Shown piece after piece: positions 1 through 14,708 of a DNA stretch of 64,000 nt (position 1 is the stretch's first letter; each line of letters begins with the position of its first letter). The stretch lies in IMG/VR virus record IMGVR_UViG_3300017971_000185, positions 62,001 through 126,000 of that record; one strand, given 5' to 3'. Made by a program: the position numbers and the translations under genes. The notes under the pieces were generated by a model. The model was not told the DNA's origin. It saw only the letters and a program-made list of their open reading frames with translations, and did not search any database.

Positions 1-141
1 CAGTCCAACATTCGACCGGTGGAGGATCTGCTCGGAGTCCAGAATCCGTCGACTGCGGTAGAGGATCTGGGGCTCGGATTGCGGTCTTTCCGCGACCCGT
101 TCTTCAAGGTCTACGCGGGCACCTACGAGAAGCTCAAGTAG
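1..141 (+). CDS. 3' end of a gene starting before the window (...RDPFFKVYAGTYEKLK*); unknown, possibly neck/tail completion by position
   Basis: Frame 1 open from base 1 to TAG at 139-141; codon usage like the structural genes. Confidence 0.6.
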   Translation, partial: QSNIRPVEDLLGVQNPSTAVEDLGLGLRSFRDPFFKVYAGTYEKLK

Positions 142-155
142 TGCGCGTCCCTCGC

Positions 156-167
156 TAGGTCGCCTAT
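156..167 (+). promoter_or_regulatory. Candidate late promoter motif TAG-N5-CTAT
   Basis: TAGgtcgcCTAT; same spacing seen in four other intergenic gaps before + strand genes. Confidence 0.35.
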
Positions 168-196
168 ATCCCACACAAAGTAGGCGGAGGTCTATC

Positions 197-676
197 CTGC
201 CGATCTACGAATACCACTGCACGGGTTGTGGGCTCCACTTCGAGAGGATGCGCCCGGCGAAGAAGGCTGAGGAAGCCGTCAATTGCCTGAGTTGCGGTGG
301 GTCCGTACAAGCACAACTTTCGGCTCCCGAGTTTGCATTTTCGCACGCGCCGGATGGCGCAGGTCCGCAGAACACGGGAGTCAGCGGCTTGGATCTTGAG
401 GTTGATCGGGTGATCGGCCGAGAGGCGGAGCAGCAGTGGGCCAAGGTAGCTGCGCGCCAAGACCGCAAGCATCAGGTTCTTGCGGCCAATCCCGGCGCGA
501 CCGGCTTCGATTTGAGCCGGACCCCGGACGGCGATTACCGCGTCATGCAGCCCGACGAACGGAAGGCTGCGGAGACTGCGCGAGGTCTCCATCAAGAGGC
601 TCAAAGTGAGATCTTGAAGACCAAGAAAGGGAAGGATTGGCTCGCGTCACGAGTGACGGGAGCGGCTGGCCCCTGA
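197..676 (+). CDS. FmdB-family zinc-ribbon protein, CTG start
   Basis: Extending ORF 248..676 upstream gives (M)PIYEYHCTGCG...CLSCG, the FmdB N-terminal signature; GGAGG at 186-190 lies 6 nt before CTG at 197. Confidence 0.85.
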   Translation: MPIYEYHCTGCGLHFERMRPAKKAEEAVNCLSCGGSVQAQLSAPEFAFSHAPDGAGPQNTGVSGLDLEVDRVIGREAEQQWAKVAARQDRKHQVLAANPGATGFDLSRTPDGDYRVMQPDERKAAETARGLHQEAQSEILKTKKGKDWLASRVTGAAGP

Positions 677-689
677 GTCAGCAGTCATG

Positions 690-900
690 CCTCTCCGCGA
701 GGAGAGTGCCAGATAAGAACACACAGATCAGACCCATACGCAGATGACTCTGGGACGAGGCACCGCACGCCTCACACGACCGCGCCTTCGGGCTGCCAGA
801 TAAGAACGCACACATAAGTCGCAGAAGCAGAAACAGACCCAGATGAGGACAGGCTGTTCGCAGCCGCATTTCTGACTGCAACCAGGCGGGTTCACCCGAC
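690..900 (+). ncRNA. Candidate structured leader/ncRNA with CAGA repeats upstream of sheath
   Basis: Hairpins CTCTCC-GCGA-GGAGAG (691-706), GCC-TTCG-GGC (784-793), GGCTG-TTCG-CAGCC (852-865), CGGG-TTCA-CCCG (887-898); duplicated TGCCAGATAAGAAC (707-720, 794-807); about 9 CAGA units. Confidence 0.5.
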
Positions 901-938
901 AGGGAGAATTTACCCGCAACCAAAACTCAGAGGTTCCA

Positions 939-3900
939 ATGCCAGACGGCACCCAGATTCCTGGTCACATTTACGCGCCCCCCAACGTCTACGTCGAGAC
1001 TCAGACTGACACGCCGGTTCAAGCACCGATTCAGGGTGTTCGCATTCCGGTGTTCATCGGCACGGGCAACGAGGTTCTGACTCAGACGGATCTCGCGGTG
1101 GTTCGCGGGTCGTCTTCCAGTGTTGACCAGCAGGTTCCGCAGGAGGACATGACCGGCCGCGCGGTTGTCGCAATTCTGGCTTCCGGCGAGGTCGTCCTGG
1201 GTGACTTCGATGGTGATCGGCGGCTCATCCAGGTGCGCAATTATCCCATCGTCACGGGCGACGGGACGGGTACCACGGCGACGGATGCAGCCAGCATCCA
1301 GGTGACGATCAACGGGCAGCCTGACGTGGTTTTGAACGTCCAGGGGGACAGAGGGGTGCTTGAGCTTTCGACGGCTCCAGGGCTCCATGACGACGTGAGA
1401 TGCACGTATTTCTTCAACCGGACCGACACGCTGATCACGGACGACGTGAGCGATCAGGTGACTGCGGATCCCGCGCTCATTTACGGGAGCGGCGAGGAAC
1501 CCGCAGGCGGCTACGACATCACGGTGGACAACAATGAGTTGATCCTGACCATCGATGGCGTCGAGACCACCATCAGCCTGGGGACGCCGGGCGTGAAGCC
1601 CGCAGCTACCGTGGTCTCGTTGATCAACGGAGCGGCCTCTTCTACGTCTCTTGTGGCTTCGCTCTACACCACGAATTTCGGCGGCACTGCCATCCAATTC
1701 GTGGCCGACGAAAACCTCATCGTTGGTGCCGGTACGGCCAACACACTTCTTGGTCTGACCACGGGTGACGCGACCAATCGGCGCTCGACGTTCTACACAT
1801 TCCAGGGTCCGATCGTTGACGGTTCCAACGGAGGAATCACGACCACGGACACCGGGAAGGTGACGGTCCGCGTCAACAATGTCCAGGTCATCCCCACGTC
1901 CGTCAATGGATCGACGCGAGCGGTGACGTTGCCCTTTGCTCCGGCTGCTGGCTCGACCGTCACCATCGAGTACTTTTTCAATAGTTGGCAAGATACCTTC
2001 GACTATCTGGCGAACATCAACCTCACGGAGATCACCCGAGTCGGCATCGTTCCGGGGAACAGCGATTTCGTGCAGGGTGCGGACTTCGTGCTCAAGGATG
2101 ATGTCATTGTCTGGGGTACGTCGGTTCTCATCACTTCGGGTGTTCACACCGAAGGAAGCACGTACTTCGGTGGAGATGGAGGCCAGGTCAGCGCGCTCTT
2201 GGTGGATGCGCAGACGTACTTGGAGGAAGCCACTCCTGTCACGGATGCGACGGTCAGCCCGCCAGTTACGAGTCGGACGAAATTCGACCTTCCGTTCCAG
2301 CCCACGACGGGCAACGGACGCAACACGCCGATCGGGTTGAGTCTGTTCCAGACGGTCAGCAACAACCGTATCGATCTTCCGACCAATCGCCCGGATCTGG
2401 TGATCGCCTATTGGGGCTTCTCGGTCGAGGATGCTTTGCAGCGTGGTCCGGTGGACGTGACAGCGGTCGAGGGAACCAGGATCACTTTGAAGGATCCCGT
2501 GGACGTGGGTGCAACGGTCTACGCCACGTTCTACTACAACACGCTCGTAGATGAGGAGTACAGCCTGGTTTGTGACGTGGCTGGTGCTTCGGGCATTGGT
2601 ACCTATTTCATCCAAGACTCGAATAGCAACGACATGTTCACGCCGCGGTTTGGCGTGAAGGGGGCTGCGCTCACGGGCATCACCATCCAATTCCCGAGCG
2701 GCAGCGAGCTAACCCCGGACGTGCGTTTCGAGAGTGGTACGGACGGTCCGGTCGAGGAGACGGTCACGGTCTCGTTCGCGAGCATCGATGACACGATTGC
2801 GAAGTACAGCGTGCCCGGATCGGGACCGTACTTCACGATCGAGGATGCCTCTGATCATGCACGTTTCTTGATCGACGGCACGGCACCGACTGGTGGCGGA
2901 GCGGGAATCGATCTTGCCCGTGTGGACGGAATCACCGGCTTGGGCGTGTCGGCCAGCTTGCTGGGCGAGGAGATCGAGTATGACGTAGCCTCGGGCAGCA
3001 CGACCTACGACATTACGGCCGGGACCAACGACGAGGTTTCGGTCACGGTCGATGATGTGCTCATTACGTCGATCGCTGCGGCAGGAACGGGTGTCAACGC
3101 GGACAACTACGTTGACGCGCTCAATGCTTTCGCCAAGCTGCAACAGTTTGCTCCGTTCTACACGGCACAGACACGTTTCGTGGGGTCGACGGTCATTACT
3201 GCCGGCGAGTACGACACTTTGGTCATGCACTACAATGGTGCTGTGGCAGGCCCATCGGGTGCGATCACGGCGATCATTCCGCCGCTGACCTACGCCAGCC
3301 CCATGGCTCTGGCAACGGCTCTGGATGGAGTGATTGCAGCCGCAGTCGGTGGTTTGGGTCCGGCGTTTGCCGGGTTGGCGATCAACGTTACTGTGGATGC
3401 CAATAGCCGGCTCCGATTCACGTTGCAGGCGGCGACGGGAGACATCGGCACTTTCGCGGCCGGTGGTGTCATCACCGTGGCGTTAGTGCCGGTCGTGGGT
3501 GACCAGATCATCTTCACGGATTGGGCTGGGAACCAGGCAGCACTCACGGCAGATACGGCCACAACGCCAGGCGGCAACAACTTCGACGTGTCGTCCGGTG
3601 TGGCAGCCACGATCGCTGGTCAGATCGCTATAGCGATTCAAGATGTGACGAACAACGTGGCTTCGATCGTGACCACGACGGGCGCTGTTGGTGTGACGAT
3701 TCCAGTGGTGCCAACTGTTCCGGGTACGCTCGGAAACCGGGTCGTCATGGCCGAATCCGCCGCAACTCCGGCAACCTTCACGTTCGTACAGCCTTCGGGC
3801 GCGACGGACTTGGCAGGTGGCTATTTGGAGTTTGCGGACGCACCGACGCTTGCCAGCGATTTCGCGATTCTGGCAGGCATCAGCGTGGCTCCGGCACCGG

Positions 3901-6278
3901 GAGGATTGCAGACCAAGTTGCTCAACGGAGACATCGCTCGGCGCTTCTCGGTAGCGGGCGGTTCCGGTGCGCTTATCTACGATCGCATCATTCTCCGCAA
4001 CCGCATCATGCCTGGATCGGGCAGCGTGGCCGGGCCTTCCCAGCTTGCGCAGACAGAGCTACGCATCGAGGGGAACAATGCGATCACGGAGACGGGTCTC
4101 CAGCCCAACGACGCTGGGTTGGCGGCGATGGGGGCGGTCGTGCAGCCAGCGACGCTGTTTGGCGAAGTGGGGTTTGTCAGCGGTCAGGTGCCGACAGGCG
4201 CCTACGGGGATGCTCGCGACGGGCAGCCGGTGGTGACGTTCTTCGCAGACGGAGGCACACAGCCGCAGAACAACGTGTTCAAGATCAACATCGATGGCAT
4301 CATGGTGAACGTCACGTTCACGGATGCTGCGGGTGTGGTCATTCCGGCTGGCGGCACAGCAGACGTACCGTTGGGGCCGGGAACGATCGCGAACACGATT
4401 CTGGCACAGCTAGACGCCGCCGCAGTGGCGGCTGGGTTGCCCGCGGGCACGTTCTTGCCAGAAGGCGCTGGTATTCGGATCGTGAGCGGCACGTCTCGCG
4501 TGTCCTCAGCGATCACGGTTGGAGCCGGGAATGCCAACGATGTGTTGGGATTCTCGTCTGGCGGCACGGCGGCACGGACGGAGGTAGAGCCCGAGCAGAT
4601 TGCTTCGGCTCTCATGGCGCATCACGACGCAACGGTATCGGCCAAGCTCCTGAGCTACTCCTCGCCAGGAGTGACCTACTTCGCTGGCTTGGCTCTTGCT
4701 GGTGTCATCAGGGATGCGGCGAATGCCGAATTCCTGTACCTCCAGAGTCAGGCGAGCACGGTCGGAGGTCTGGGTCTGTCGAGCAGCATTGCGCTGCTAC
4801 AGCCCACGGTTGGAAACGGTAGCTGGCTGCTTCCAGGCACGGGCATCAATGCCGAGGTTGGTGACGGCGCATCCGGTGAGGAAGGCTTCAACGGATACTA
4901 CGTCACATCGTCCGATCCGACAGACGGGTCCGGGTCAGCGAACACGTCGAGGCTCAACAACGGAGTGGGTCAAGATGGCGTGATCGGCCAGACGTATCGA
5001 GATACCGTCACGGGTCTCACGTTCACGGTTCTGGCACGTGAGGGTGGCGGGGTGTACCCGACTGGTGTGGGTGCAACCTTCACTTTCGAGGTACGCAATA
5101 AGGTCATCACGGACAGCAACCTTCCGGTCAACACAATCCCCGGAATCGAGCTTTTGGTGACGAACACCACTGGCGTCGCGGTCGGGGACACGGCTGTGGT
5201 CGATACGATCGAGCGCGGGGGCAGCGAGCCTGCCGTGGGCGATCTCTACTACGCGACCTACAACTACCAAAAGGAAAGTTTCGACACTGGCTTGTACACA
5301 CGGCTGGCAACGATCGAGCGTGTGTTTGGTGCAACATCGCCAGAGCATCTTCTGTCCCTGGCGGCGTATGTGTCGATCATCAACGGGGCGGTTGTCGTTG
5401 GGCTCAAACAGGTTCCCAAGCAGCCCAACAGCAATCAGGGCAGTATCACGGACTACTTCGATGCCGTGGACGATGTGCGTGGAGTCCTCCCAGGTGGGGC
5501 GAGGCTCAGCACGCTCACTCCGTTGCGTGGAGACTCGGAGGAGCTATTCCAGAAGATCAGTCAGCATGTTGATCTCCAGTCCAGCATCCGGCTGCGATCG
5601 GAGAGAACCTCGATCTTTGGCGTTTCCTCGGGGACGCAGCCCTCGGCTGCGGGAGACCTGGCCGAGTTGCTGGGCAACACCCGGATGAGGATGGTCTACC
5701 CAGACATCGCCAAGATCACGCTGACCGATGCGGTGAACAACGACAAGCAATTCCTGGTTGACGGCACGATTCTCTCGGCGGCAATGGCAGGAAACCGAGC
5801 AAGCCCGAACATCGACGTGGCAACGCCATGGACACGGGCACGATTGCTCGGGTTCGATGAGCTTGCTCGTATCCTCGATGCGGTCGAGCAGAATCAGGTT
5901 GCCGTGCGCGGCGTGACGATCTTGGAGGATCGCCGTCCGGCAATCAGTGTGCGCCATGGGCTCACGACGGATGTCACCAACGTCCTGACCAAGACCCCAA
6001 CCGTGATGACGATTGCGGATGAGGTACAGCAGCAGACTCGCGTGACGCTGGACAGGTTCATCGGGGTCAAATTCCTGCCCGGTATCCTGAATCAGATCGA
6101 AGGTCGCCTGACCTTCATGCTCAAGGGGCTCATCGCGGCGGAGATCATCGCTGCCTTCACTGGAGTGCAGGCTCAGACAACGAGTGATCCAACGGTGGTT
6201 GCGGTCGAAGCATGGTATCAGCCTGTTTTCCCGCTACTATACATCATCGTCACCTTCAACCTCCGCTCAGTTTTGTGA
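939..6278 (+). CDS. Contractile tail sheath protein, very large with inserted domains
   Basis: N-terminal YAPPNVYVE (PGVY-type motif); C-terminal sheath domain ...TVMTIADEV...DRFIG...DPTVVAVEAWYQPVFPLLYIIVTFNL; upstream of tube and tape measure genes. Confidence 0.9.
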   Translation: MPDGTQIPGHIYAPPNVYVETQTDTPVQAPIQGVRIPVFIGTGNEVLTQTDLAVVRGSSSSVDQQVPQEDMTGRAVVAILASGEVVLGDFDGDRRLIQVRNYPIVTGDGTGTTATDAASIQVTINGQPDVVLNVQGDRGVLELSTAPGLHDDVRCTYFFNRTDTLITDDVSDQVTADPALIYGSGEEPAGGYDITVDNNELILTIDGVETTISLGTPGVKPAATVVSLINGAASSTSLVASLYTTNFGGTAIQFVADENLIVGAGTANTLLGLTTGDATNRRSTFYTFQGPIVDGSNGGITTTDTGKVTVRVNNVQVIPTSVNGSTRAVTLPFAPAAGSTVTIEYFFNSWQDTFDYLANINLTEITRVGIVPGNSDFVQGADFVLKDDVIVWGTSVLITSGVHTEGSTYFGGDGGQVSALLVDAQTYLEEATPVTDATVSPPVTSRTKFDLPFQPTTGNGRNTPIGLSLFQTVSNNRIDLPTNRPDLVIAYWGFSVEDALQRGPVDVTAVEGTRITLKDPVDVGATVYATFYYNTLVDEEYSLVCDVAGASGIGTYFIQDSNSNDMFTPRFGVKGAALTGITIQFPSGSELTPDVRFESGTDGPVEETVTVSFASIDDTIAKYSVPGSGPYFTIEDASDHARFLIDGTAPTGGGAGIDLARVDGITGLGVSASLLGEEIEYDVASGSTTYDITAGTNDEVSVTVDDVLITSIAAAGTGVNADNYVDALNAFAKLQQFAPFYTAQTRFVGSTVITAGEYDTLVMHYNGAVAGPSGAITAIIPPLTYASPMALATALDGVIAAAVGGLGPAFAGLAINVTVDANSRLRFTLQAATGDIGTFAAGGVITVALVPVVGDQIIFTDWAGNQAALTADTATTPGGNNFDVSSGVAATIAGQIAIAIQDVTNNVASIVTTTGAVGVTIPVVPTVPGTLGNRVVMAESAATPATFTFVQPSGATDLAGGYLEFADAPTLASDFAILAGISVAPAPGGLQTKLLNGDIARRFSVAGGSGALIYDRIILRNRIMPGSGSVAGPSQLAQTELRIEGNNAITETGLQPNDAGLAAMGAVVQPATLFGEVGFVSGQVPTGAYGDARDGQPVVTFFADGGTQPQNNVFKINIDGIMVNVTFTDAAGVVIPAGGTADVPLGPGTIANTILAQLDAAAVAAGLPAGTFLPEGAGIRIVSGTSRVSSAITVGAGNANDVLGFSSGGTAARTEVEPEQIASALMAHHDATVSAKLLSYSSPGVTYFAGLALAGVIRDAANAEFLYLQSQASTVGGLGLSSSIALLQPTVGNGSWLLPGTGINAEVGDGASGEEGFNGYYVTSSDPTDGSGSANTSRLNNGVGQDGVIGQTYRDTVTGLTFTVLAREGGGVYPTGVGATFTFEVRNKVITDSNLPVNTIPGIELLVTNTTGVAVGDTAVVDTIERGGSEPAVGDLYYATYNYQKESFDTGLYTRLATIERVFGATSPEHLLSLAAYVSIINGAVVVGLKQVPKQPNSNQGSITDYFDAVDDVRGVLPGGARLSTLTPLRGDSEELFQKISQHVDLQSSIRLRSERTSIFGVSSGTQPSAAGDLAELLGNTRMRMVYPDIAKITLTDAVNNDKQFLVDGTILSAAMAGNRASPNIDVATPWTRARLLGFDELARILDAVEQNQVAVRGVTILEDRRPAISVRHGLTTDVTNVLTKTPTVMTIADEVQQQTRVTLDRFIGVKFLPGILNQIEGRLTFMLKGLIAAEIIAAFTGVQAQTTSDPTVVAVEAWYQPVFPLLYIIVTFNLRSVL

Positions 6279-6322
6279 GGTACACTAGCGCTCTAGGCTA
6301 GTACAGAGCCCAAAAGCGGCGT

Positions 6323-6352
6323 TTGCCGTGGGGTCTGTGGTGGTGGTATGGT
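6323..6352 (+). promoter_or_regulatory. Sigma70-like promoter for a leaderless nuclease-MTase mRNA
   Basis: TTGCCG (6323-6328)-N18-TATGGT (6347-6352) with TGn extension; ATG 6 nt downstream at 6359 and no clear SD. Confidence 0.5.
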
Positions 6353-6358
6353 GGTGGT

Positions 6359-8542
6359 ATGGATGAGGAGATCTGTGCAGCCTTTCGGTCCGATCTGTCT
6401 TCTGCCGCGGTTGCTGAATCGTTGGGGGTTGGTCGACAGCGTGTTCTCAAAGTCTGGAAGGCTTCCTTTGGTGCCGGTGAGGTAAGAGCACGTGCGAATA
6501 GGCTTCGCTCTCGCCCCAAGAAAGAAGATCCTCAGCAACGGGCAGCAGCTCTGCCGTGGTTCGCTGAGGGTGTGGCAGTCAAGGAGGCTGCGCGAAGATT
6601 GGGTGTCCACTATCTCAAGGTTCAACGATGGTGGATCGAAGAGTTTGGAGAAGAAGTATATCGGAGTCGTGGAAAGCGTCTTCAAGCTGCGCGAACGGCA
6701 GCCAATAACCGTAGAGGATTGCCGAAGACGCAAACGGTTGTACGAGTCGCCTGTGAAGACTGCGGCACGGAACACGACCGTACAATGATGAGTTTGGCCA
6801 AGGCTGCGCGGCTCATTTGTCCAACGTGTAAGAGCAAGAAGCAAGATCCGCATGCGTGTCCGGTGTGTGGTTTTGTGTTCGAAGGCGCTCGGGGGTTGGC
6901 GTCTCATTTTCGGCATCAACGGAATTGCTCTGCGCATAAGGAGTATCGACGCAAGCAATGGGAAGTCCTGGCAAGTCGGACTGACGAGTACGTGACTTGC
7001 CAGGAGTGTGGCTTCGTAGGTCGGTCGATTTCGGCTCATATTCAAACACACGACCTAAATTGGAGGAGCTACACGCGTAAGTATCCTGGTGCTCCTCTGT
7101 ATTCGGCGATCTCAGAGGCACGGAGGCGTGCTCGTATCCGGGAAACACATGCCAGGTACGGATTCACATACGCGGACTTCAAGGCGTACCTGGATGACGA
7201 GCATCGTTTGATTGTGGCGGCTGCGGCTAAGGGATTGGGAGTTGCTCAAGATACGGTGCGGACATACGCGAAGAAACTAGACATCCCTACGCGGAATCGA
7301 TTGGCGTGGCAGCGAGAAGTCTTGCAGACGGTAGCTGATGTTTTGGGCGAAGCGTATAAGTGGGAATGGTCTGACGATCGTATTCGAAATCCCGAGACGG
7401 GGAGGTTACTGAATTATGACGGCTGTTTTCCCAAGTCAAAGGTGATCGTGGAGTGCCATGGAATTCAGCATTACCAGTTTGTTCCTCGATGGCACCGTCT
7501 TCCAGAGGAATTTGTCAAGTTGCGGGAGCGAGACGTTTACAAAAAAGAGCGAGCGGAGGAGCTTGGCTATACCGTGATCGAAGTGCGCTATGATGCAGAG
7601 GTATCTCGTGAGTTTTTCATGGAGTTGTTGCGAGCACCAAAGAAGAGTCGTCAGGCGGTGAAGGACAAGGCCGAGACAATTCTGCGGGAGCTACGGAGGG
7701 ATTGCTTTCCGTTTCCGGTGATCGATCCAGAGGAGACTCGGAGGGAGTTGGAAAGGCTACAACGGAAGCGCCTGAAGTTAGTTGACGGGATTATCGTTCC
7801 TCGTTCGTGGGTTGGGACCAAAGTCTGCAAAGCATATTTCCCCAATCTCTTCCAAGCCAGGTACAAGAATCAGCTATCGGCTGTAGAGGCGTGGAATTCG
7901 GATGAGAAGCTCCGGCTTGCTATCCTGACTCAACTAGACTCGTCGCATCCGACGACACCAGAACGAGTGCTTAAGGCGATTCTGATGCATCATCGGGTTC
8001 CTACGGTTTTCCGTCCAGCTTATGCTCGATACTTGTATGACCGCTACTGCCCGGAAGGCAAGACAACATGGGATCCTTGCGCAGGGTGGGGCGGGCGTCT
8101 CTTGGGCGCCGCAGCGGCGAATGTGAGATACATCGGAACGGAGATTGATGCTCTTACTGTCGAGGGGAATCGCAGGTTAGCTTCCGATCTGCGGCATGAC
8201 GCGGAGATCATTGAAGGGTCGGCATTGGGCGCGGACATCCCTCAGGTAGACTTTGTATTCACCTCTCCGCCCTACTATGACGTTGAGCAGTATTCAGACC
8301 ATCCTGAACAACCTCACATGCGATTTGGTTCCGAGGAGGATTGGGTAGAGGGGTTTCTCTTGCCTTTGGTCAGGAAGGCACGTTCTGTGCTGCCTCAAGG
8401 CTGCGCTATGGCTCTCAACCTCTCCGATGCCTTGCTAGGGCGTCTAGAAGAGTGCGCTTTTGATTGTGGTTTTGAGCTTGAGACCGTGGTTGGCTTTGAG
8501 CTTCCGAATGGAAAGGTTGCTCGGACAGCCGTTTACCGATAG
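6359..8542 (+). CDS. HTH/zinc-finger + PD-(D/E)xK (DUF559/Vsr-like) endonuclease fused to amino-DNA methyltransferase
   Basis: CEDC..CPTC, CPVC..H..H, CQEC..H..H fingers; NYDGCFPKSKVIVECHGIQHY..RDVYK nuclease motif; MTase motif I WDPCAGWGGRLLG and motif IV FTSPPYY; more A/T-ending codons than neighbours. Confidence 0.85.
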   Translation: MDEEICAAFRSDLSSAAVAESLGVGRQRVLKVWKASFGAGEVRARANRLRSRPKKEDPQQRAAALPWFAEGVAVKEAARRLGVHYLKVQRWWIEEFGEEVYRSRGKRLQAARTAANNRRGLPKTQTVVRVACEDCGTEHDRTMMSLAKAARLICPTCKSKKQDPHACPVCGFVFEGARGLASHFRHQRNCSAHKEYRRKQWEVLASRTDEYVTCQECGFVGRSISAHIQTHDLNWRSYTRKYPGAPLYSAISEARRRARIRETHARYGFTYADFKAYLDDEHRLIVAAAAKGLGVAQDTVRTYAKKLDIPTRNRLAWQREVLQTVADVLGEAYKWEWSDDRIRNPETGRLLNYDGCFPKSKVIVECHGIQHYQFVPRWHRLPEEFVKLRERDVYKKERAEELGYTVIEVRYDAEVSREFFMELLRAPKKSRQAVKDKAETILRELRRDCFPFPVIDPEETRRELERLQRKRLKLVDGIIVPRSWVGTKVCKAYFPNLFQARYKNQLSAVEAWNSDEKLRLAILTQLDSSHPTTPERVLKAILMHHRVPTVFRPAYARYLYDRYCPEGKTTWDPCAGWGGRLLGAAAANVRYIGTEIDALTVEGNRRLASDLRHDAEIIEGSALGADIPQVDFVFTSPPYYDVEQYSDHPEQPHMRFGSEEDWVEGFLLPLVRKARSVLPQGCAMALNLSDALLGRLEECAFDCGFELETVVGFELPNGKVARTAVYR

Positions 8543-8798
8543 TCGTTCTAGTCGTGTTTTCCCATCAGAGGATCGGGCTTCGTTGCAGAAGCGACGAAAC
8601 GGGGGCTTGCAAGAAGCCTCTTGCCAAGAGTCGTAGCCAGGTTCGGCGTATTCGCCAGCGAACCAGATCGCTTCGATTTGGCGTCGTCCTTGGGGCGTCT
8701 TGGCCGAACGAACGGCAGCTTGTAGGGCTGGGCGACACGTCATGGGAGCCATTGGGTGCTTTCTCAGCACATCGATGGCGTGGTGTTTCGCAACTACG

Positions 8799-8869
8799 GC
8801 CGAAGCCCAAGGGCGGTATCGATTCCCGTCCTTGGGCTGTCACGCCATTGTCGGGTTAGTTGAAGTCAC
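8799..8869. repeat. 71-bp direct repeat copy 1 (hairpin + duplicated DUF932 3' end)
   Basis: 68/71 identical to 9907-9977 (offset 1108); includes hairpin 8804-8838. Confidence 0.95.
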
Positions 8870-8906
8870 CCGCTGCTGTATATTCAACCTCAGGTCGGTG
8901 CTGTAG
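8870..8906 (+). pseudogene. Relic of a second allele of the tail sheath 3' end
   Basis: ccg ctg ctg tat att / ttc aac ctc agg tcg gtg ctg tag encodes PLLYI and FNLRSVL*, matching sheath end PLLYIIVTFNLRSVL* (6231-6278) with synonymous differences and 11 nt fewer. Confidence 0.85.
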
Positions 8907-8920
8907 TTGCTCAGTCTTGG

Positions 8921-8942
8921 GGCCGCCGGATTTCCGGCGGCC
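8921..8942. terminator. Perfect GC hairpin, probable bidirectional terminator
   Basis: GGCCGCCGGA-TT-TCCGGCGGCC between relic sheath stop and the stop of the convergent gene at 8943. Confidence 0.7.
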
Positions 8943-9311
8943 TCACTTCTTCTTGACCTTCCAGGGAGTGGTCTCTTCTGGGTGGAACGTGGCCTCGATG
9001 CCAGCCTCATCGAGCGCGCCAACGAGATCAAGAAGCATCAGGAGCGAAGTCTCGATCGTGTCTTTTGGGGACTTGGTGGAAAACTTGTAAGCCTGGTCTC
9101 CGAAACGGAGGGAGACGGTTTGACAGTCGCTAGAGATGTGGATGGACGAGTGGTCTCGGATGCTCATGCGTGCCTCTACCGCTCGCGCTTCGGCTGCGTC
9201 GCGCTTGTCTTGCAGTGCAGTTGTTGTCGATACATGGTCCACGAACCGCACCCACCCGCCGTCGTCGGCCGCGTACATGCCGGAAGGTCTCCATTCGTAT
9301 CGCTTATCCAC
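8943..9311 (-). CDS. Hypothetical protein
   Basis: 122-aa ORF overlapping the upstream gene stop, ends at the terminator hairpin. Confidence 0.65.
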   Translation of the reverse strand: MDKRYEWRPSGMYAADDGGWVRFVDHVSTTTALQDKRDAAEARAVEARMSIRDHSSIHISSDCQTVSLRFGDQAYKFSTKSPKDTIETSLLMLLDLVGALDEAGIEATFHPEETTPWKVKKK

Positions 9312-9633
9312 TGTCCGACTTCTTTCCGTAACGCCCGATGCACTCGTCGCGTTTGCGTTGGATCTCGGTCTCGTCTTGCTCGGTGGTGCGGGGTGGCCTG
9401 TCGTTCATCCACGCGAGGTCAAAGGCAGCGCACGCCTTCTCGGGAGTGTCGCCAAACCCGGCCACGCCAACCTGCAAGTCTTCGCCTAGCAGCGCGCACC
9501 ACTGGTTTCCGTCTGGGAAAATGCGTGGCCGGAACACGACTGAGGGGCGCGAATACTGCTCGCCTACGATCGCTGCCTGTCTACAGATCTCTGCGCCTGC
9601 GGCCGTTGCTTCTAGCCCGACCGTCGTCCTCAT
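9304..9633 (-). CDS. Phage hypothetical protein (DGNQWCAL...GVAGFGDTP, possibly HicB-like fold)
   Basis: ATG at 9633 with GGAG SD; recognisable phage motif; the listed longer ORF start (9918) is unlikely. Confidence 0.7.
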   Translation of the reverse strand: MRTTVGLEATAAGAEICRQAAIVGEQYSRPSVVFRPRIFPDGNQWCALLGEDLQVGVAGFGDTPEKACAAFDLAWMNDRPPRTTEQDETEIQRKRDECIGRYGKKSDSG

Positions 9634-9634
9634 C

Positions 9635-9697
9635 TCACTTCTCCCATTGTCCGAAGCCGGCATCGCGATAGCCAGGTCGTCCCGTGTAGTTAGCCAT
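9635..9697 (-). CDS. 20-aa peptide MANYTGRPGYRDAGFGQWEK
   Basis: Fills the gap between RHH stop (9699) and next ATG (9633) with 1-nt spacers; GGAAGG upstream. Confidence 0.4.
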   Translation of the reverse strand: MANYTGRPGYRDAGFGQWEK

Positions 9698-9698
9698 A

Positions 9699-9860
9699 TT
9701 AGCCTTCCAGGGGTGGTAGGGCGACTTGGAGGACAGCCCGTACCAGCGTAGAGGGCGATACCCCGCGGTCCCTCGCTATCTTCTCCAGCCGGGCGCGGTA
9801 GCCTGCCGGCAACCGAAGGTGGAAATGCTCGGAAAGCTCGACGCCCCTGTTCGAGAGCAC
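9699..9860 (-). CDS. Ribbon-helix-helix (CopG/Arc-like) DNA-binding protein
   Basis: HFHLRLPAGYRARLEKIARDRGVSPSTLVRAVL fits the RHH pattern; start (GTG 9860) uncertain. Confidence 0.7.
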   Translation of the reverse strand: MLSNRGVELSEHFHLRLPAGYRARLEKIARDRGVSPSTLVRAVLQVALPPLEG

Positions 9861-9906
9861 GAAGTCGATCTGGGTTGAAAGGTCTCTTGATCGCAATGTT
9901 GCACCT

Positions 9907-9977
9907 GCCGAAGCCCAAGGGCGGTATCGATTCCCGTCCTTGGGCTGTCGCGCCGTTGTCAGGTTAGTTGAAGTCAC
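9907..9977. repeat. 71-bp direct repeat copy 2 (DUF932 stop + terminator-like hairpin 9912-9946)
   Basis: AGCCCAAGGGCGG-N9-CCGTCCTTGGGCT just downstream of DUF932 TAA. Confidence 0.95.
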
Positions 9978-10770
9978 GCCGGAGGCCACAGAAGCCATCG
10001 AGCAGGACGTGAAGCTGCTCAGTCTTGGCCGGAAGGGTGAAGAGATCGTTGCTTTCGCGTCGGGGCTTGAGAACCTCGGTAAACGCGTTCATCAGCCGCC
10101 AGGTGGTCGGTCCCGCTTCTCGGAATTCGGGGTGACGGGGCTCTCTCCACTCGGAGAGGATCTGCGAGATCTTGCTGGAGGCGATGACATCGGCATCGAG
10201 CGCGCGAATGAGCAGGTCGTTTACCTGCGCGTCGTTTAGCTCGTGCTGCTTGTACGTCGCGAGGCGCTGGTCTTGGAAGTCCTTGAGCGCTGCGACTTGC
10301 TGGAGAGCCTCGGCGATCAGCTTGGCAAGATCGCGAAGGATGTTCGGGGTGTGCTTGCGACCGACCTTGATTTCGCCGGAGAAGCACAGGTTGTCGCAAA
10401 CGAACACGCCCGAGCCGACTACAAGGCCAGCCAGGAACGTCTTGTCGTTGGCGTTGCGGAGCCCGAGGATGATGCTGTAGTCCGGGTCGAGGATCGGGCT
10501 GTTCATCTCCGTGGGAACAGGATCGAGCACCGGAGCCGGTGCTACTTCCAGCATTCCGAAGTAGCGCAGGTTCTCGTGAGAGAGTGCGTGTACCTCTTGG
10601 ATGGTGGTTAGCCCCACGGTGGTGATTTGGTTCTCCACTTCCTCCAGCAGTGTGCTGTGGGGGATGGGGGTGTGTCTTGGGCCGGCGGCCTCAGGCTCGG
10701 GCAGCGTAAAGAGGACTTCCCGAGGAACCTGATGGGCACCGCAGTGAGTCAAGAGGTTGAGGTTTGTCAT
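9964..10770 (-). CDS. DUF932-family protein
   Basis: HTPIPH, GLRNANDK, VFVCDNLCFSGE, RKHT, TTWRLMNAFTE motifs; GGAG SD. Confidence 0.85.
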   Translation of the reverse strand: MTNLNLLTHCGAHQVPREVLFTLPEPEAAGPRHTPIPHSTLLEEVENQITTVGLTTIQEVHALSHENLRYFGMLEVAPAPVLDPVPTEMNSPILDPDYSIILGLRNANDKTFLAGLVVGSGVFVCDNLCFSGEIKVGRKHTPNILRDLAKLIAEALQQVAALKDFQDQRLATYKQHELNDAQVNDLLIRALDADVIASSKISQILSEWREPRHPEFREAGPTTWRLMNAFTEVLKPRRESNDLFTLPAKTEQLHVLLDGFCGLRRDFN

Positions 10771-10788
10771 GTCGTATCTCCTGTCTCT

Positions 10789-10816
10789 TCTACGCGAGAT
10801 TCGGGGGAAAGTTTAC
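10789..10816 (-). promoter_or_regulatory. ECF-like early promoter GTAAACTT-N12-CGCGTAGA, copy A
   Basis: Identical boxes and spacing in three places, each 17-18 nt before an ATG. Confidence 0.8.
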
Positions 10817-10824
10817 ATAGTCGC

Positions 10825-11280
10825 TCATTCGCATCGGCGAATCGGAGCTTTTCTAGGTTGCGGGGTGTTTACATAGTATGTCTTCGCTTCGGATCTGAGC
10901 CACTTCAAGAAGATGGTAACCCTCGGTGCGTCGTATTCGTTCACGGTTTTCAAGGGCGCGTCCATACCCTTCTTAAAGGCTGCGAAGGCTTGCTTTTGCT
11001 TCATCCACAGACCGTCGCTGGGTATGAGCCATAGACGTTCCCAATTGTTGCTCAGGCAGAGGGCTTCATCGAGAGACTCGACAGGCTCAAAGTACCAAGC
11101 CCAGTGCCCCTTGCAGGTTCCACCGATGCAGCCGGGCGAGATGACCCAACCCTCTTCGTAGTCCTTGCAAAGTGTGCCGATGGTGATGCCTTCTACGCGC
11201 ACGTCGTATTGACAAGCGTTGCGGTGCTTTTCGGCCAGCCGCTTGAATTCGACGTTCATCTTTTGGTAGCCGCTGATCAT
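10825..11280 (-). CDS. Hypothetical protein
   Basis: ATG 2 nt after PolX stop; 151 aa. Confidence 0.6.
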   Translation of the reverse strand: MISGYQKMNVEFKRLAEKHRNACQYDVRVEGITIGTLCKDYEEGWVISPGCIGGTCKGHWAWYFEPVESLDEALCLSNNWERLWLIPSDGLWMKQKQAFAAFKKGMDAPLKTVNEYDAPRVTIFLKWLRSEAKTYYVNTPQPRKAPIRRCE

Positions 11281-11282
11281 GT

Positions 11283-12023
11283 TTAGCTCGCTATCTCGCA
11301 CTCTTTGTTGTACTTGGCCTGAGCGGTCTCGATGTGACGGCATTTGCGCCGAAACTGGAAGCCCTCGCACTCGCAATTCCAGCGGTTGTTCTTGCCAAGC
11401 CAGACTCGGTAAGAACCATCCTTGGCGCTCGGGATCTCGCACTCCCATTCGACTTCGCCACGGAAGCACTTGAGATCGTCACGAGCGGGCGGGGTGGTGT
11501 ACTCCAGCCCGAGCGCTTCGAAAACCTCGCGTTCGGTCTTACCGGCGATGCGCCGATACCAGCGCTTTTCAGTCTCGCCCTTCCGCTTGACGTGAATGAA
11601 CGCGTAGCCCTGGGACTCGTCCGTTTCCTCGGGATCACATGGCTTGTATACGCCCTTTTCGTTGAGGAGTAGCCCCAGCGCGGCGGCGTGGCTTCGCATC
11701 TTGATGTTGAAGGTATGCGGGCCGGTCAGGTAGAGCCACGCGGCGCCGAAGCCATCTTCATCGGGCGCTCGGATCACGTCTACCTGCATGCCACCCACGA
11801 TGAGCCGGATCTTGGCATCCTTTCCTTGGACCCACTCGAAACCAGCTTTCTCGATTTCCGCCTGTGTGGGTAGCGTGCCGAGGAACACGATATCGACATC
11901 GCGAACGTACTCTTTGCCACGACGGAGAGAGCCGGCGATCTTGGCTTCCTTACCGAGCAAGGCGAGGACGGGAGCTACTCGCTCGACCGCGACGCCCTGG
12001 GGAATCTTCTTACCTTTGCTCAT
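11283..12023 (-). CDS. Minimal X-family DNA polymerase with C-terminal SWIM zinc finger
   Basis: AGSLRRGKEYVRDVDIV, QVDV, YLTGP..FNIKMR, LNEKG, TEREVFEALGLEY..P..R; then YRV...WNCECEGFQFRRKCRHI (CxC-xn-CxH). Confidence 0.88.
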   Translation of the reverse strand: MSKGKKIPQGVAVERVAPVLALLGKEAKIAGSLRRGKEYVRDVDIVFLGTLPTQAEIEKAGFEWVQGKDAKIRLIVGGMQVDVIRAPDEDGFGAAWLYLTGPHTFNIKMRSHAAALGLLLNEKGVYKPCDPEETDESQGYAFIHVKRKGETEKRWYRRIAGKTEREVFEALGLEYTTPPARDDLKCFRGEVEWECEIPSAKDGSYRVWLGKNNRWNCECEGFQFRRKCRHIETAQAKYNKECEIAS

Positions 12024-12303
12024 CGTTGGTCTCCTTTAGCCGATACCAGAGGAAGCCTCGGTCTACACACTCAGCGACTCGAATGGCAGTGCTCTCCAGC
12101 ACGAGATGCTTGACCGGATGCCCGGACGAGCAAACCGGACACGGTCCGGTGAATGAGCCGGTGATTCGTATTCGTGCTCCGCCAAGCTCGGAAGGAAGCC
12201 TGACCCAATCGGGAGCGCCGTCGCCCACGAGGTACATGCTCTCGTCCTCCGTGGAGGGTGAGGCGAAGTCGCCGGGGCGGCGGTTGAACCATGCGGTGGT
12301 CAT
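12010..12303 (-). CDS. Hypothetical protein (CPVC, possible Zn site)
   Basis: ATG in a TGATG overlap with the upstream stop. Confidence 0.6.
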   Translation of the reverse strand: MTTAWFNRRPGDFASPSTEDESMYLVGDGAPDWVRLPSELGGARIRITGSFTGPCPVCSSGHPVKHLVLESTAIRVAECVDRGFLWYRLKETNDEQR

Positions 12304-12519
12304 CAGGACGCCTTGGCTTCGGGAGCACTCTCCAGCTTGAGATCATCCCCGATGGCTGTCAACGCATCTTGGAAGGACCCCACGAAGGTGTTGCGAGAGG
12401 CGGTTATCACGTTGATGTGACGGCCGCGCCTCTCCTTGGGTCCGGCGAGTCCGCGGTCGATGCTTGTCCTGGTAGACGAGGGTCCGGTCGTCGCGGGAGG
12501 TTTCGAGAAGAAGGTGCAT
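12303..12519 (-). pseudogene. Small gene split by a +1 frameshift
   Basis: SD+ATG at 12519 (MHLLLETSRDDRTLVYQDK) and the C-terminus coupled to the next gene (IDRGLAG...APEAKAS*) are in different frames; span 217 nt = 3n+1. Confidence 0.5.
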
Positions 12520-12537
12520 CTTTTGCTCTCCAACCTC

Positions 12538-12565
12538 TCTACGCGAGATCCCCGAAGAAGTTTAC
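12538..12565 (-). promoter_or_regulatory. ECF-like early promoter, copy B
   Basis: GTAAACTT-N12-CGCGTAGA. Confidence 0.8.
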
Positions 12566-12619
12566 ATTTCAAAACGCGCGTAGGGCGCGGGCAAATCCTT
12601 CGATAGAAGCCTGTCTACG

Positions 12620-12877
12620 ATGGCTCTGGCCAAGATCATTAGGTTTGTCCGCTTGGCGGACGGCAAGACCAAGCTGGAGGCGAAGCGTGGAGCGAAGAAT
12701 CCCTACTTGAACACGCCGCCGACTGTGTTGAAACGCGATCTCGAAAAGGAGACCAATCCCATGAAACGCAAGTTGATGAGCGACGCATTGAATGCTTGGC
12801 GGATGACGCATGGGAATCCTTTGGCTCGTTCTGCGGCTCGTGTAGCTGCGCGTTGGCTCGACAGCGGAGGGACCTGA
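12620..12877 (+). CDS. Small basic hypothetical protein
   Basis: 85 aa, K/R-rich, stop 2 nt before the SpeD-like ATG. Confidence 0.65.
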   Translation: MALAKIIRFVRLADGKTKLEAKRGAKNPYLNTPPTVLKRDLEKETNPMKRKLMSDALNAWRMTHGNPLARSAARVAARWLDSGGT

Positions 12878-12879
12878 CG

Positions 12880-13275
12880 ATGCATGGGCCGTTTGCTGGT
12901 TGGCACCTAATCGTGGATGCTCTCGTCGGGTCTGGAGATCCCACTGACCGGTTGGCGGATGTTGAGTTTCTGGAGACGTTTCTCAGGGATCTCGTGATCC
13001 ATCTGGATATGAAGATCCTGGGCGGTCCCTACATGAATGTGGTCGAGCCCGATTCGAAGCTCATTGAGACGGAAGAGGATGAGGGTGGGGTGACAGGATG
13101 TGTAGTGATCACAACGAGCCATATCTCACTGCACACGTGGCCGCTACGCAACCGCTTCTCCCTCGACATCTACTCGTGCAAGCAGTTTGACCCGGATGCA
13201 GCTAAGGACTTCATCACGGGACGACTTAGTTGCACGGAGCGAAGTATCAACTGGACGCAGCGGCTCTGGCCTTAG
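12880..13275 (+). CDS. speD: S-adenosylmethionine decarboxylase-like pyruvoyl proenzyme
   Basis: GWHLIVD, GGVTGCVVITTSHISLHTWP, DIYSCK; GGAGG SD before ATG 12880. Confidence 0.85.
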   Translation: MHGPFAGWHLIVDALVGSGDPTDRLADVEFLETFLRDLVIHLDMKILGGPYMNVVEPDSKLIETEEDEGGVTGCVVITTSHISLHTWPLRNRFSLDIYSCKQFDPDAAKDFITGRLSCTERSINWTQRLWP

Positions 13276-13590
13276 CTACTTGTCCTTGTCTAGATCGGCC
13301 TTGCAAGCGTCCAGGTCTTCATACGTGATGAGCAACGGGCGCTCATCCACATCGGGGAAACACTGATTGGGCACGCACTGTGACTTCACGTCCCAGCCAT
13401 CGACGGTGGTCACGATGGAGCAGGTGAAGCCATCCTTGCAGCCGTCCTCGCCGTGGGGTGCCTCTTCATCGCATTCGTCCGCAGGCGCATTCACGACAAT
13501 CGGATCGCTCTGCGTGTCAGCGGCAGGCGCCGTCTGCAAAGGAGCGTTGGCCGTCAGAGCGAGGAACCCGGTGAGGATGGTGGTGAGCAT
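13276..13590 (-). CDS. Exported Cys-rich protein with signal peptide
   Basis: Hydrophobic N-terminus MLTTILTGFLALTANA, 6 Cys, acidic; GGAG SD. Confidence 0.7.
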   Translation of the reverse strand: MLTTILTGFLALTANAPLQTAPAADTQSDPIVVNAPADECDEEAPHGEDGCKDGFTCSIVTTVDGWDVKSQCVPNQCFPDVDERPLLITYEDLDACKADLDKDK

Positions 13591-14520: not shown

Positions 14521-14526
14521 GGTACA

Positions 14527-14708
14527 GTGGCCTAAAACCGAGCAGTCGGTGGTTTCCAAGAATCAGACGCAGATGAATATCAGATCATATCCAGATTCCC
14601 GTGCTGTCTCCTAAACCCTATATCAGATCCAGACCCACATAGATCAGACCCAGATTCGTTTGCGCTGTTTTCCAGGCCACCGCTTGCTCTCTCAACGGGA
14701 GTAGCGGT
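14527..14708 (+). ncRNA. Candidate structured leader with CAGA repeats and SD-sequestering hairpin
   Basis: Closing stem GTGGCCT (14527-33)/AGGCCAC (14674-80) around 8 CAGAY units; hairpin 14679-14708 pairs GGGAG just before ATG 14709. Confidence 0.5.

What the first reader, a model, noticed from the sequence alone, without database searches (positions are those of the whole stretch)
690..900. Tetraloop-hairpin + CAGA-repeat element upstream of the sheath gene
Seen: twice, a stable tetraloop hairpin (GCGA, then cUUCGg) is immediately followed by TGCCAGATAAGAAC(A/G)CACA and a poorly pairing tract with CAGA every 5-12 nt that ends in CAGATGA. Two more hairpins follow (UUCG and UUCA loops). Established: GNRA and UUCG loops are typical of functional RNA, and short iterated motifs are bound by multimeric RNA-binding proteins (TRAP, Hfq, CsrA). 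Inference: an undescribed cis-regulatory or sponge RNA controlling sheath expression or antitermination. The adjacent FmdB Zn-ribbon protein is a candidate partner.
Basis: partly seen in the sequence, partly recalled or inferred. Interest (0 to 1): 0.7.

Follow-up and report, generated by a model that had tools for sequence, protein, structure and literature searches.

The report
Conserved structured leader RNA before sheath
The 262-base gap between a zinc-ribbon gene and the tail-sheath gene of a ~500-kb phage holds a structured RNA not in Rfam, conserved across a clade of huge phages and duplicated before the next tail-gene block, whose mechanism is still unknown.

Summary
Window 677-938 holds two tetraloop hairpins, each followed by the same 14-base motif, plus CAGA-rich unpaired tracts and two further hairpins. 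CAGA density here is the highest in the 497-kb phage genome.

It is not a local oddity. A covariance model built only from relatives, without the window, finds the window element at E 1e-8. It finds 27 elements, all on the + strand and all between the FmdB-like gene and the sheath gene.

- **Structure:** six helices are supported. 88% of cells pair, against 38-51% when partners are slid, and 26 of 36 pairs show compensatory change. A long-range helix closes about 190 nt.
- **Selection:** the spacer is 55-83% identical between phages whose fourfold synonymous sites are only 33-54% identical (one FmdB comparison 20%).
- **Coding and databases:** no frame is conserved and Rfam has no match.
- **Second copy:** a paralogous element lies at 14521-14708, between the likely tail-tube and tail-chaperone genes.

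Best reading: a cis-acting leader of late tail mRNAs whose repeated single-stranded motifs, displayed between hairpins, bind a protein that is still unidentified. The mechanism is inferred, not shown. The sponge, antitermination and FmdB-partner ideas stay untested. A resemblance to CRISPR repeats (the phage encodes a type I-C system) failed a direct test.

The parts
197..676 (+). FmdB-type zinc-ribbon gene (159 aa), probable CTG start behind GGAGG
   Evidence: Pfam Zn_ribbon_8 E 2.6e-10. Homologues sit upstream of the sheath gene in all 26 relatives with enough flank. All use weak start codons: TTG, ATT, CTG or ATC.
681..687 (+). P1 5' strand (GCAGUCA), begins 5 nt after the FmdB stop
   Evidence: Pairs with 873-879. 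Helix 1 of model R1: 93.7% of cells paired, 4 of 8 pairs with compensatory change.
690..706 (+). H1 hairpin, GCGA tetraloop
   Evidence: Family helix 2: 7 of 8 pairs with a change on both sides.
707..720 (+). Motif copy 1 (UGCCAGAUAAGAAC), start of unpaired tract A (707-756)
   Evidence: Exact 14-mer found only twice in the genome. No conserved pairing partner was found.
740..750 (+). M2 motif (GCAGAUGACUC), end of tract A
   Evidence: Aligns with the nearly universal AGAU(K)GA(R)AC of relatives.
757..773 (+). H2 hairpin (5 bp, 7-nt loop)
   Evidence: RNAfold finds a hairpin here in most members, with unrelated stem sequences. There is a compensatory change against L005.
784..793 (+). H3 hairpin, cUUCGg
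   Evidence: Family helix 3: 4 of 5 pairs with compensatory change.
794..807 (+). Motif copy 2 (UGCCAGAUAAGAAC), start of unpaired tract B (794-851)
839..850 (+). M4 motif (CCAGAUGAGGAC), end of tract B
   Evidence: Aligns with (A)GAUGUGAAC of relatives.
852..865 (+). H4 hairpin, UUCG loop
   Evidence: Family helix 4: all 6 pairs with compensatory change.
873..886 (+). P1 3' strand (UGACUGC) plus AACCAGG, the most conserved stretch of the family
   Evidence: Invariant or nearly invariant columns; helix 1.
886..917 (+). H5 domain: outer stem 886-891 with 912-917, inner CCC GACA GGG 895-904. Competes with the CGGG UUCA CCCG hairpin.
   Evidence: Family helices 5 and 6: 78-80% paired, 5 of 9 pairs with compensatory change.
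929..933 (+). Shine-Dalgarno sequence AGAGG, unpaired in the consensus structure
939..6278 (+). Tail sheath gene (1779 aa)
   Evidence: C-terminal 450 aa match phrog_2839 'tail sheath', E 7.8e-26. Weak Pfam Phage_sheath_1C match.
14521..14708 (+). Second, paralogous leader between the likely tail-tube gene (13723-14520) and the likely tail-assembly-chaperone gene (14709-15932). It has 5 CAGAU, helix 14564-14572 with 14660-14667, and a 3' hairpin 14679-14708 holding the GGGAG ribosome site.
   Evidence: Its orthologues in relatives are found by model R1 at E 6e-8 to 1e-4. Gene identities are leads.

Best explanation
Window 677-938 is one member of an undescribed family of structured leader RNAs of huge phages.

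Shown:
- It is read on the + strand as part of the mRNA that runs from the FmdB-like gene into the tail-sheath gene.
- A long-range helix (P1) closes a domain of about 190 nt. The domain is made of two homologous tandem modules.
- Each module is a tetraloop-capped hairpin, a 10-12-nt motif (CCAGAU..GAAC), an A/C-rich U-poor unpaired linker, a second motif copy (CAGAUG.GAAC) and another hairpin.
- A further hairpin domain (H5) lies about 20 nt before an open Shine-Dalgarno site.
- A paralogous copy sits before the next tail-gene block.

Inferred mechanism: the four single-stranded motif copies, held apart and exposed by the hairpins, are binding sites for a sequence-specific RNA-binding protein, or for an oligomer of one. 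The protein could be of the phage or of the host. Its occupancy would set the translation and/or lifetime of the sheath mRNA and of the chaperone/tape-measure mRNA, coordinating tail-protein output late in infection.

In short, structure, conservation, strand and duplication are shown. The protein partner and the regulatory outcome are inferred.
For: - Independent detection: model R1, built from 16 relatives without the window, hits window 679-925 at E 1.3e-8. It gives 27 hits in 99 loci, all on the + strand and all between FmdB and sheath.
- Covariation: 88% of cells are paired, against 38-51% with slid partners. 26 of 36 pairs have compensatory changes, and 0 of 500 shuffles reach this.
- Purifying selection: spacer identity is 0.55-0.83, while fourfold synonymous sites of the flanking sheath gene are 0.33-0.54 identical (one FmdB value 0.20).
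- Not coding: most frames carry stops and no frame is consistently open across relatives.
- The motif tracts have no conserved pairing partner, yet they keep specific sequence, including invariant A, G and U positions.
- The two modules are homologous to each other.
- The CAGA/CAGAU density here is the genome maximum. The only other intergenic cluster is the second leader.
- R1 recognises that second leader's orthologues in three relatives. Two copies sharing motifs before two tail-gene blocks is what a shared trans-acting factor predicts.
- The P1 5' strand starts 5 nt after the FmdB stop, and overlaps the FmdB coding end in L015. The RNA therefore begins upstream of the spacer.
Against: - No transcript data exist. 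All 20 public runs that hold this DNA are DNA metagenomes.
- No partner is identified. The phage encodes no CsrA, S1-domain or Hfq protein.
- The Shine-Dalgarno site is not sequestered in the consensus structure, so a simple occlusion mechanism is not visible.
- The preference for the + strand from wobble pairs is modest (88.0% against 84.3% if read on the other strand).
- Hairpins plus unstructured A/C-rich tracts could act without any protein, as stabilisers or ribosome-loading sites.
- The motif differs between the window's clade and the main clade, so 'one protein, one motif' is an extrapolation.
Confidence: 0.45

Rival explanations
1. Protein-independent mRNA stabiliser, processing element or translation enhancer. 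The stable tetraloop hairpins block exonucleases and define processed ends, which uncouples the abundant sheath message from the weakly translated FmdB cistron. The U-poor A/C-rich tracts resist RNase E and act as ribosome stand-by sites.
For: - The layout of hairpin, single strand, hairpin, single strand with an open ribosome site recalls known stabilising leaders (own knowledge: ompA 5' UTR).
- U content is only 13-17%.
- FmdB uses weak start codons in all relatives, while sheath has ATG and a good ribosome site.
- More distant relatives have shorter spacers that still follow hairpin, C/A-rich tract, hairpin.
Against: Composition and hairpins alone do not explain three things: specific 10-nt motifs with invariant positions kept in four copies, the covarying long-range P1 helix, and the conserved AACCAGG stretch.
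Confidence: 0.2
2. CRISPR-repeat-like (crRNA-like) units. Each hairpin plus following motif mimics a type I-C repeat (hairpin plus 11-nt handle). The 36-43-nt tract and the next hairpin mimic a spacer and a 3' hairpin. The phage's own Cas5/Cascade, or the host's, would then bind or cut the leader.
For: - G000 encodes cas7, cas5 and cas8c of type I-C plus a helicase, and about 24 repeats made of a GC hairpin and a tail ending GAUURCAAC.
- G002 also has a type I-C system and an array.
- The two at least 92% complete relatives without the leader (G006, G007) lack Cas7 and Cas8c.
- The pseudo-spacer lengths (36 and 43 nt) are close to the real spacers (27-42 nt).
- Solitary repeat units and crRNA-like regulatory RNAs of phages are known (PMC10651486; preprint 10.1101/2024.10.29.618823).
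Against: - A covariance model of the phages' own repeats (R2) gives no hit on the leader units in the window, and no significant hit in relatives (only hairpin-stem matches, E >= 0.6), with filters off.
- The 7/11 identity of CAGAUAAGAAC to the phage's own handle has P about 0.013 per random 11-mer.
- No Rfam CRISPR-DR model hits the leaders.
- The hairpins differ from one another within a single leader.
- The tract sequences are conserved, not variable as spacers are.
- The Cas association rests on four genomes and is confounded by relatedness.
- No spacer targets the leaders.
Confidence: 0.08
3. Processive antitermination RNA (nut- or put-like) that modifies RNA polymerase, so that the 5.3-kb sheath gene and the more than 50-kb tail operon behind the second copy are transcribed to the end.
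For: - There are two copies per genome, each before long + strand genes or blocks.
- The hairpin-plus-linear-motif units resemble boxB/boxA in layout (own knowledge).
- The phage appears to lack sigma-70-type promoters (0 found against 4.1 expected), which suggests unusual transcription.
Against: - No boxA-like sequence is present.
- In relatives the terminator-like hairpin lies upstream of the second leader, not downstream.
- At 190-250 nt the element is far larger than known nut or put sites.
Confidence: 0.07
4. A riboswitch or a self-cleaving ribozyme. P1 closes a multi-helix junction whose conserved unpaired nucleotides form a ligand pocket or an active site.
For: A closing helix, a multi-stem junction and invariant junction nucleotides are typical of both classes. 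Tandem homologous modules recall tandem aptamers.
Against: - There is no expression platform: no terminator and an open ribosome site.
- The linkers of 30-45 nt are very long and show no covarying tertiary pairing.
- No Rfam class matches even at E 10.
Confidence: 0.07
5. A stand-alone small RNA or protein sponge that is cut out of the mRNA and titrates a host regulator.
For: Iterated motifs in unpaired regions between hairpins are the layout of the CsrB/RsmZ/CrcZ sponges. P1 pairs the two ends of the domain, as in many stable processed RNAs.
Against: - The motif lacks the GGA core of CsrA sites and the 3-nt periodicity of Hfq ARN sites (direct reading).
- There is no own terminator.
- Its fixed position before tail genes in every member points to cis action.
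Confidence: 0.05

Closest known systems
Autoregulated phage and bacterial mRNA leaders with a structured nucleation site and an unstructured repeat tract (T4 gene 32 operator; own knowledge)
   Same: A folded element is followed by an unpaired tract with iterated short motifs, upstream of the ribosome site of an abundant phage protein. The action is in cis.
   Different: - Here there are two tandem modules closed by a long-range helix.
- The motifs are A/C/G-rich rather than A/U-rich.
- The partner is unknown.
- A paralogous copy serves a second operon.
Protein-titrating RNAs CsrB/RsmZ and CrcZ, and the TRAP-binding trp leader
   Same: Several copies of one short motif are displayed in unpaired segments between hairpins.
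   Different: - No GGA core (CsrA), no A-R-N triplet period (Hfq/Crc) and no (G/U)AG repeats at 2-3-nt spacing (TRAP).
- Only 3-4 motif copies.
- No own terminator.
- The phage encodes no CsrA or Hfq.
Solitary CRISPR repeat units, RNA anti-CRISPRs (Racr, PMC10651486) and phage crRNA-like regulatory RNAs (10.1101/2024.10.29.618823)
   Same: A phage-borne non-coding hairpin is followed by a handle-like tail, then a spacer-length tract and a second hairpin. A type I-C system is present in the same phage genome.
   Different: Similarity to the phage's own repeats is not above chance. The hairpins within one leader differ. The position is fixed before tail genes rather than near anti-CRISPR genes.
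ompA-type 5' UTR stabilisers
   Same: Alternating hairpins and single-stranded segments ending in an accessible ribosome site.
   Different: This leader is much longer, has sequence-specific conserved motifs, and has a covarying helix that closes the domain.
Lambda nut / HK022 put antitermination sites
   Same: Two copies per genome in leaders of long operons, built from hairpin plus linear motif units.
   Different: No sequence similarity; several-fold larger; position relative to promoters and terminators is unknown or unfavourable.

Membership tests
Any Rfam 15 family | Match to a covariance model at or above its gathering score | tested here: not met
   0 hits in the whole window. Only three chance-level hits at E 2-7 in 600-1000. 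No leader hit in five relatives.
CRISPR-repeat-like RNA (solitary repeat unit / Racr / crRNA-like RNA) | Sequence and structure similarity to the repeat of a cognate CRISPR array | tested here: not met
   Model R2 of the repeats of G000 and G002 gives no hit on leader units in the window at E <= 10, and only hairpin-stem matches at E >= 0.6 in relatives. The 7/11 handle identity has P about 0.013.
CRISPR-repeat-like RNA (solitary repeat unit / Racr / crRNA-like RNA) | A cognate Cas system is available in the phage or host | tested here: met
   Type I-C cas7, cas5 and cas8c are present in G000 and in G002. The host is unknown.
CRISPR-repeat-like RNA (solitary repeat unit / Racr / crRNA-like RNA) | Binding or cleavage by the Cas RNA endonuclease | not testable with these tools
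   Needs an in vitro Cas5 assay.
CsrA/RsmA-titrating RNA | Many GGA motifs, mostly in hairpin loops | tested here: not met
   The hairpin loops are GCGA, UUCG and ACCGCAC. Most motif copies lack GGA. No CsrA in the phage.
TRAP-type attenuation leader | 9-11 (G/U)AG triplets separated by 2-3 nt | tested here: not met
   CAGA spacing is irregular, with starts 5-25 nt apart within a tract, and the repeat is not conserved as triplets in relatives.
Riboswitch | Conserved aptamer closed by a P1 helix | tested here: met
   P1 with covariation closes a junction of four hairpins (H1-H4).
Riboswitch | Expression platform (terminator, or sequestered ribosome site, alternating with P1) | tested here: not met
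   No terminator in 677-938. The Shine-Dalgarno site is unpaired in the consensus.
Intrinsic terminator(s) of the upstream gene | GC hairpin followed by a U tract | tested here: not met
   None of the five hairpins is followed by a U run, and the scan finds none in the spacer.
Small protein-coding gene | A frame kept open across relatives, with indels in multiples of three | tested here: not met
   Most frames carry stops in each relative, and no frame is consistently open across them. Indels have arbitrary lengths.
Genome-wide promoter motif | Recurs upstream of many genes | tested here: not met
   The 14-mer occurs only twice in the genome, and with up to 2 mismatches three times. Model R1 hits the genome once.

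The most novel reading that the evidence does not exclude
The leaders are crRNA mimics. Each module (hairpin, handle-like motif, spacer-length tract, 3' hairpin) would be loaded by the phage-encoded type I-C Cas5/Cas7 proteins. The phage would then use its own CRISPR machinery as an RNA-binding switch on tail-gene mRNAs, or use abundant late mRNAs as decoys for a host type I-C system.
Probability: 0.08. Interest if true: 0.9.

Novelty: new variant of a known kind. Interest (0 to 1): 0.6.

Why it matters
Very little is known about how huge phages regulate their genes. This is a strongly constrained RNA of about 250 nt with clear covariation. It is present in two copies per genome, directly before the sheath gene and before the chaperone/tape-measure block. 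It therefore gives a concrete and testable handle on post-transcriptional control of tail assembly in uncultured 200-600-kb phages. It is also a ready candidate for a new RNA family, with a seed alignment and model already in hand. If the repeated motifs recruit a phage protein, the pair would be a new orthogonal RNA-protein module.

Tried and rejected
- **Rfam.** Gathering and permissive thresholds gave nothing.
- **tRNA/tmRNA scan.** None found.
- **RNA-seq.** All 20 runs that hold the sequence are DNA metagenomes.
- **GenBank phage collection, distant blastn.** No match.
- **Genome-wide promoter reading.** Rejected, because the motif is unique to this spot.
- **Coding reading.** Rejected.
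- **Extra helices or pseudoknots in the motif tracts.** An all-against-all column scan found only the known helices.
- **CRISPR-repeat mimicry.** Model R2 found no hit and the handle identity is at chance level. No spacer of G000 or G002 matches a leader. The pseudo-spacers have only 12-14-nt exact matches elsewhere in the genome.
- **Phage-encoded CsrA, S1-domain or Hfq partner.** Absent from four near-complete genomes.
- **Profile of the sheath N-terminus against solved structures.** Nothing. The sheath identity rests on the C-terminal PHROG hit.
- **Complex prediction of FmdB with the RNA.** Not run, because the tool gives no verdict for RNA.
- **Single-sequence folding.** The z-score is unremarkable on both strands.

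Full report
**Context**

The window is bases 62001-126000 of a single 497,194-bp virus record (57.7% G+C, 94% complete by CheckV), so it comes from a huge phage.

The finding lies in the 262-nt spacer 677-938.
- Upstream is a 159-aa FmdB-type zinc-ribbon gene at 197-676 (Pfam Zn_ribbon_8, E 2.6e-10).
- Downstream is a 1779-aa ORF at 939-6278.

**The observation**

All features are present.
- H1 is at 690-706 with a GCGA loop.
- H3 is at 784-793, a 3-bp cUUCGg hairpin.
- Each is followed at once by the identical 14-mer TGCCAGATAAGAAC (707-720 and 794-807).
- Then come unpaired tracts that end in CAGATGA.
- Two more hairpins follow, at 852-865 and inside 886-898.

The 14-mer occurs nowhere else in the genome. 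The CAGA density of this stretch is the genome-wide maximum, 9 per 200 nt against a mean of 0.94 and sd of 1.0.

The folding energy of the single sequence is not unusual (z -1.5).

**Relatives**

Searching viral and metagenome contigs with the sheath N-terminus gave 173 loci with 91 distinct upstream regions, at 100% down to about 42% sheath identity. The FmdB-spacer-sheath order is kept in every locus with enough flank.

In the clade at about 60-65% sheath identity the spacer has the same architecture as the window, with different sequence.

I built covariance model R1 from 16 of these spacers, none from the window's close kin, using a structure taken from RNAalifold and pruned by hand. R1 finds 27 elements in 99 loci. 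All are on the + strand and all lie between FmdB and sheath. The hits include window 679-925 at E 1.3e-8 and the divergent, lower-GC L030, L031, L032 and L058.

**Structure**

On the resulting alignment:
- 88% of pair cells are standard pairs, against 38-51% when partners are slid by 1-3 columns.
- 26 of 36 pairs carry compensatory double changes.
- No shuffle out of 500 reaches any of the measures.

The supported helices are:
- P1, which closes about 190 nt;
- H1, H3 and H4;
- a two-tier H5 domain.

H2 is too variable for the alignment, but RNAfold finds a hairpin at that position in most members, each with a different stem. An all-against-all column scan found no further conserved helix, so the motif tracts appear to be truly unpaired.

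Reading the pairs on the other strand lowers pairing only from 88.0% to 84.3%. The strand assignment therefore rests mainly on context and on the asymmetric A/C-rich, U-poor composition.

**Constraint**

Between pairs of phages, fourfold synonymous sites in the flanking sheath gene are only 33-54% identical, close to saturation; one FmdB comparison (window vs L009) gives 20%. The spacers of the same pairs are 55-83% identical. Most frames carry stops in each relative, and none is consistently open across them. This is a non-coding sequence under purifying selection.

**Anatomy of the family**

After P1 come two homologous modules. Each module has:
1. a hairpin capped by a UUCG- or GNRA-type loop;
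2. a motif, CCAGAU(N2-3)GAAC in the window and (C)CARAUKGAAAC in the main clade;
3. an A/C-rich linker, CAGA-rich in the window and CAGAC-rich elsewhere;
4. a second motif copy, (C)AGAUG(N)GAAC;
5. another hairpin.

The P1 3' strand and the following AACCAGG are the most conserved bases of the family. The Shine-Dalgarno site is unpaired in the consensus.

The P1 5' strand starts 5 nt after the FmdB stop codon, and in L015 it overlaps the end of the FmdB coding sequence. The RNA must therefore start upstream of the spacer, most simply as an FmdB-sheath bicistronic message.

No sigma-70-like promoter exists in 1-16000 (0 found against 4.1 expected). The only strong terminator is at 8918-8945, after the gene that follows sheath.

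**A second copy**

The only other intergenic CAGAU cluster in the genome is window 14521-14708. It lies between ORF 13723-14520 and ORF 14709-15932.
- ORF 13723-14520 is 65% identical in relatives and has tail-tube look-alikes in the ESM Atlas.
- ORF 14709-15932 has tail-assembly-chaperone look-alikes, which is lead-level evidence only.

Relatives carry an orthologous element at the same place. R1, which was built only from sheath leaders, recognises it at E 6e-8 to 1e-4. Each near-complete genome thus has two paralogous leaders, both before tail genes. R1 finds no further copy.

**Mechanism**

What is shown is a conserved, structured, cis-located RNA with iterated single-stranded motifs. The most economical reading is that the motifs are binding sites for a sequence-specific RNA-binding protein that tunes translation or stability of tail mRNAs. 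I give this 0.45.

The rivals, in order of weight:
- **Protein-free stabiliser or enhancer (0.2).** It explains the hairpins and the composition, but not the motif conservation or P1.
- **Antitermination, and riboswitch or ribozyme (about 0.07 each).** Neither has a visible platform, and neither could be tested.
- **Stand-alone sponge (0.05).** There is no terminator and the position before tail genes is fixed.

The phage encodes no CsrA, S1-domain or Hfq protein. FmdB remains a possible partner, but nothing singles it out. Its synteny with sheath also holds where this leader is absent, and the second leader has no FmdB neighbour.

**The CRISPR lead**

While scanning the genome I found that G000 carries a type I-C cas7-cas5-cas8c cluster with a helicase. 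It also has about 24 CRISPR repeats made of a GC hairpin and a 13-nt tail ending GAUURCAAC.

The only other near-complete leader-bearing genome, G002, also has a type I-C system and a long array. Two near-complete relatives without the leader lack Cas7 and Cas8c.

The leader modules look like crRNAs: hairpin, handle-like motif, a 36-43-nt tract, then a hairpin. I tested this directly.
- A covariance model of the phages' own repeats gives no hit on the leader units in the window, and only hairpin-stem matches at E 0.6 or worse in relatives, even with filters off.
- The 7/11 identity between the motif and the phage's own handle is expected in 1.3% of random 11-mers.
- No spacer matches a leader.

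The resemblance is therefore not above chance. I keep it only as the most novel reading not excluded (0.08). The known categories it would join are solitary repeat units/Racrs (PMC10651486) and phage crRNA-like regulatory RNAs (10.1101/2024.10.29.618823).

**Verdict**

- It is a new variant of a known kind, the structured cis-acting leader RNA. It has an unusual two-module, motif-displaying architecture and a paralogous second copy.
- Interest: 0.6.

Noticed in passing
window 14521-14708: Second CAGAU-rich structured leader, between the likely tail-tube and tail-assembly-chaperone genes. It is paralogous to the sheath leader and conserved in relatives. In four relatives a terminator-like hairpin with a U tract lies just upstream of it.
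   Followed up: partly
outside the window: G000 482,758-491,025 (locus L196 5564-13830): Phage-encoded type I-C CRISPR-Cas: cas7, cas5, cas8c and a 736-aa ResIII/DEAD helicase. About 24 repeats follow in several sub-arrays whose hairpin stems differ while the tail GGUU(K)CGAUU(R)CAAC is kept. No cas1/cas2 was looked for. G002 has a divergent counterpart with about 30 repeats.
   Followed up: partly
window 197-199 and the same position in L005-L027: The FmdB-like gene starts with a weak codon in every relative (TTG 9, ATT 3, CTG 2, ATC 2; never ATG), behind a conserved TAGACGGAG-like ribosome site. This suggests deliberately low or regulated translation.
   Followed up: partly
L006 about 2160-2960, L007/L008 about 2160-2960, L037, L046, L033; window 6323-8542: Homing-endonuclease-like ORFs are inserted between the leader and the sheath start in several relatives. 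By reading the translation these look GIY-YIG-like. In the window, a 739-aa ORF with HNH, ROS/MucR and methylase-like matches sits directly after the sheath gene.
   Followed up: no
whole genome G000, upstream regions: The 7-mer GCGTAGA (extended: TGGCGTAGA) is found in 18 of 238 upstream regions, against 2.9 expected, while sigma-70-type promoters are absent from window 1-16000. It may be the phage's own promoter or leader signal.
   Followed up: no
G002:C1:359320-359380 (locus L193), minus strand: Weak R1 hit (E 0.5) that looks like a minimal version of the leader: P1 strands, AACAAGGG and an H5-like hairpin, without the two modules. It lies after a gene ending in CxxC...CxxC.
   Followed up: no
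window 17093-64000: An unbroken run of + strand giant ORFs (962, 1847, 817, 3634, 870, 1176, 1130, 1814 and more than 970 aa). The one submitted to the family searches (17093-19981, PHROGs) had no match, and neither did the smaller ORFs just upstream of the run. Presumably these are tail, baseplate and tape-measure proteins of unusual size.
   Followed up: no
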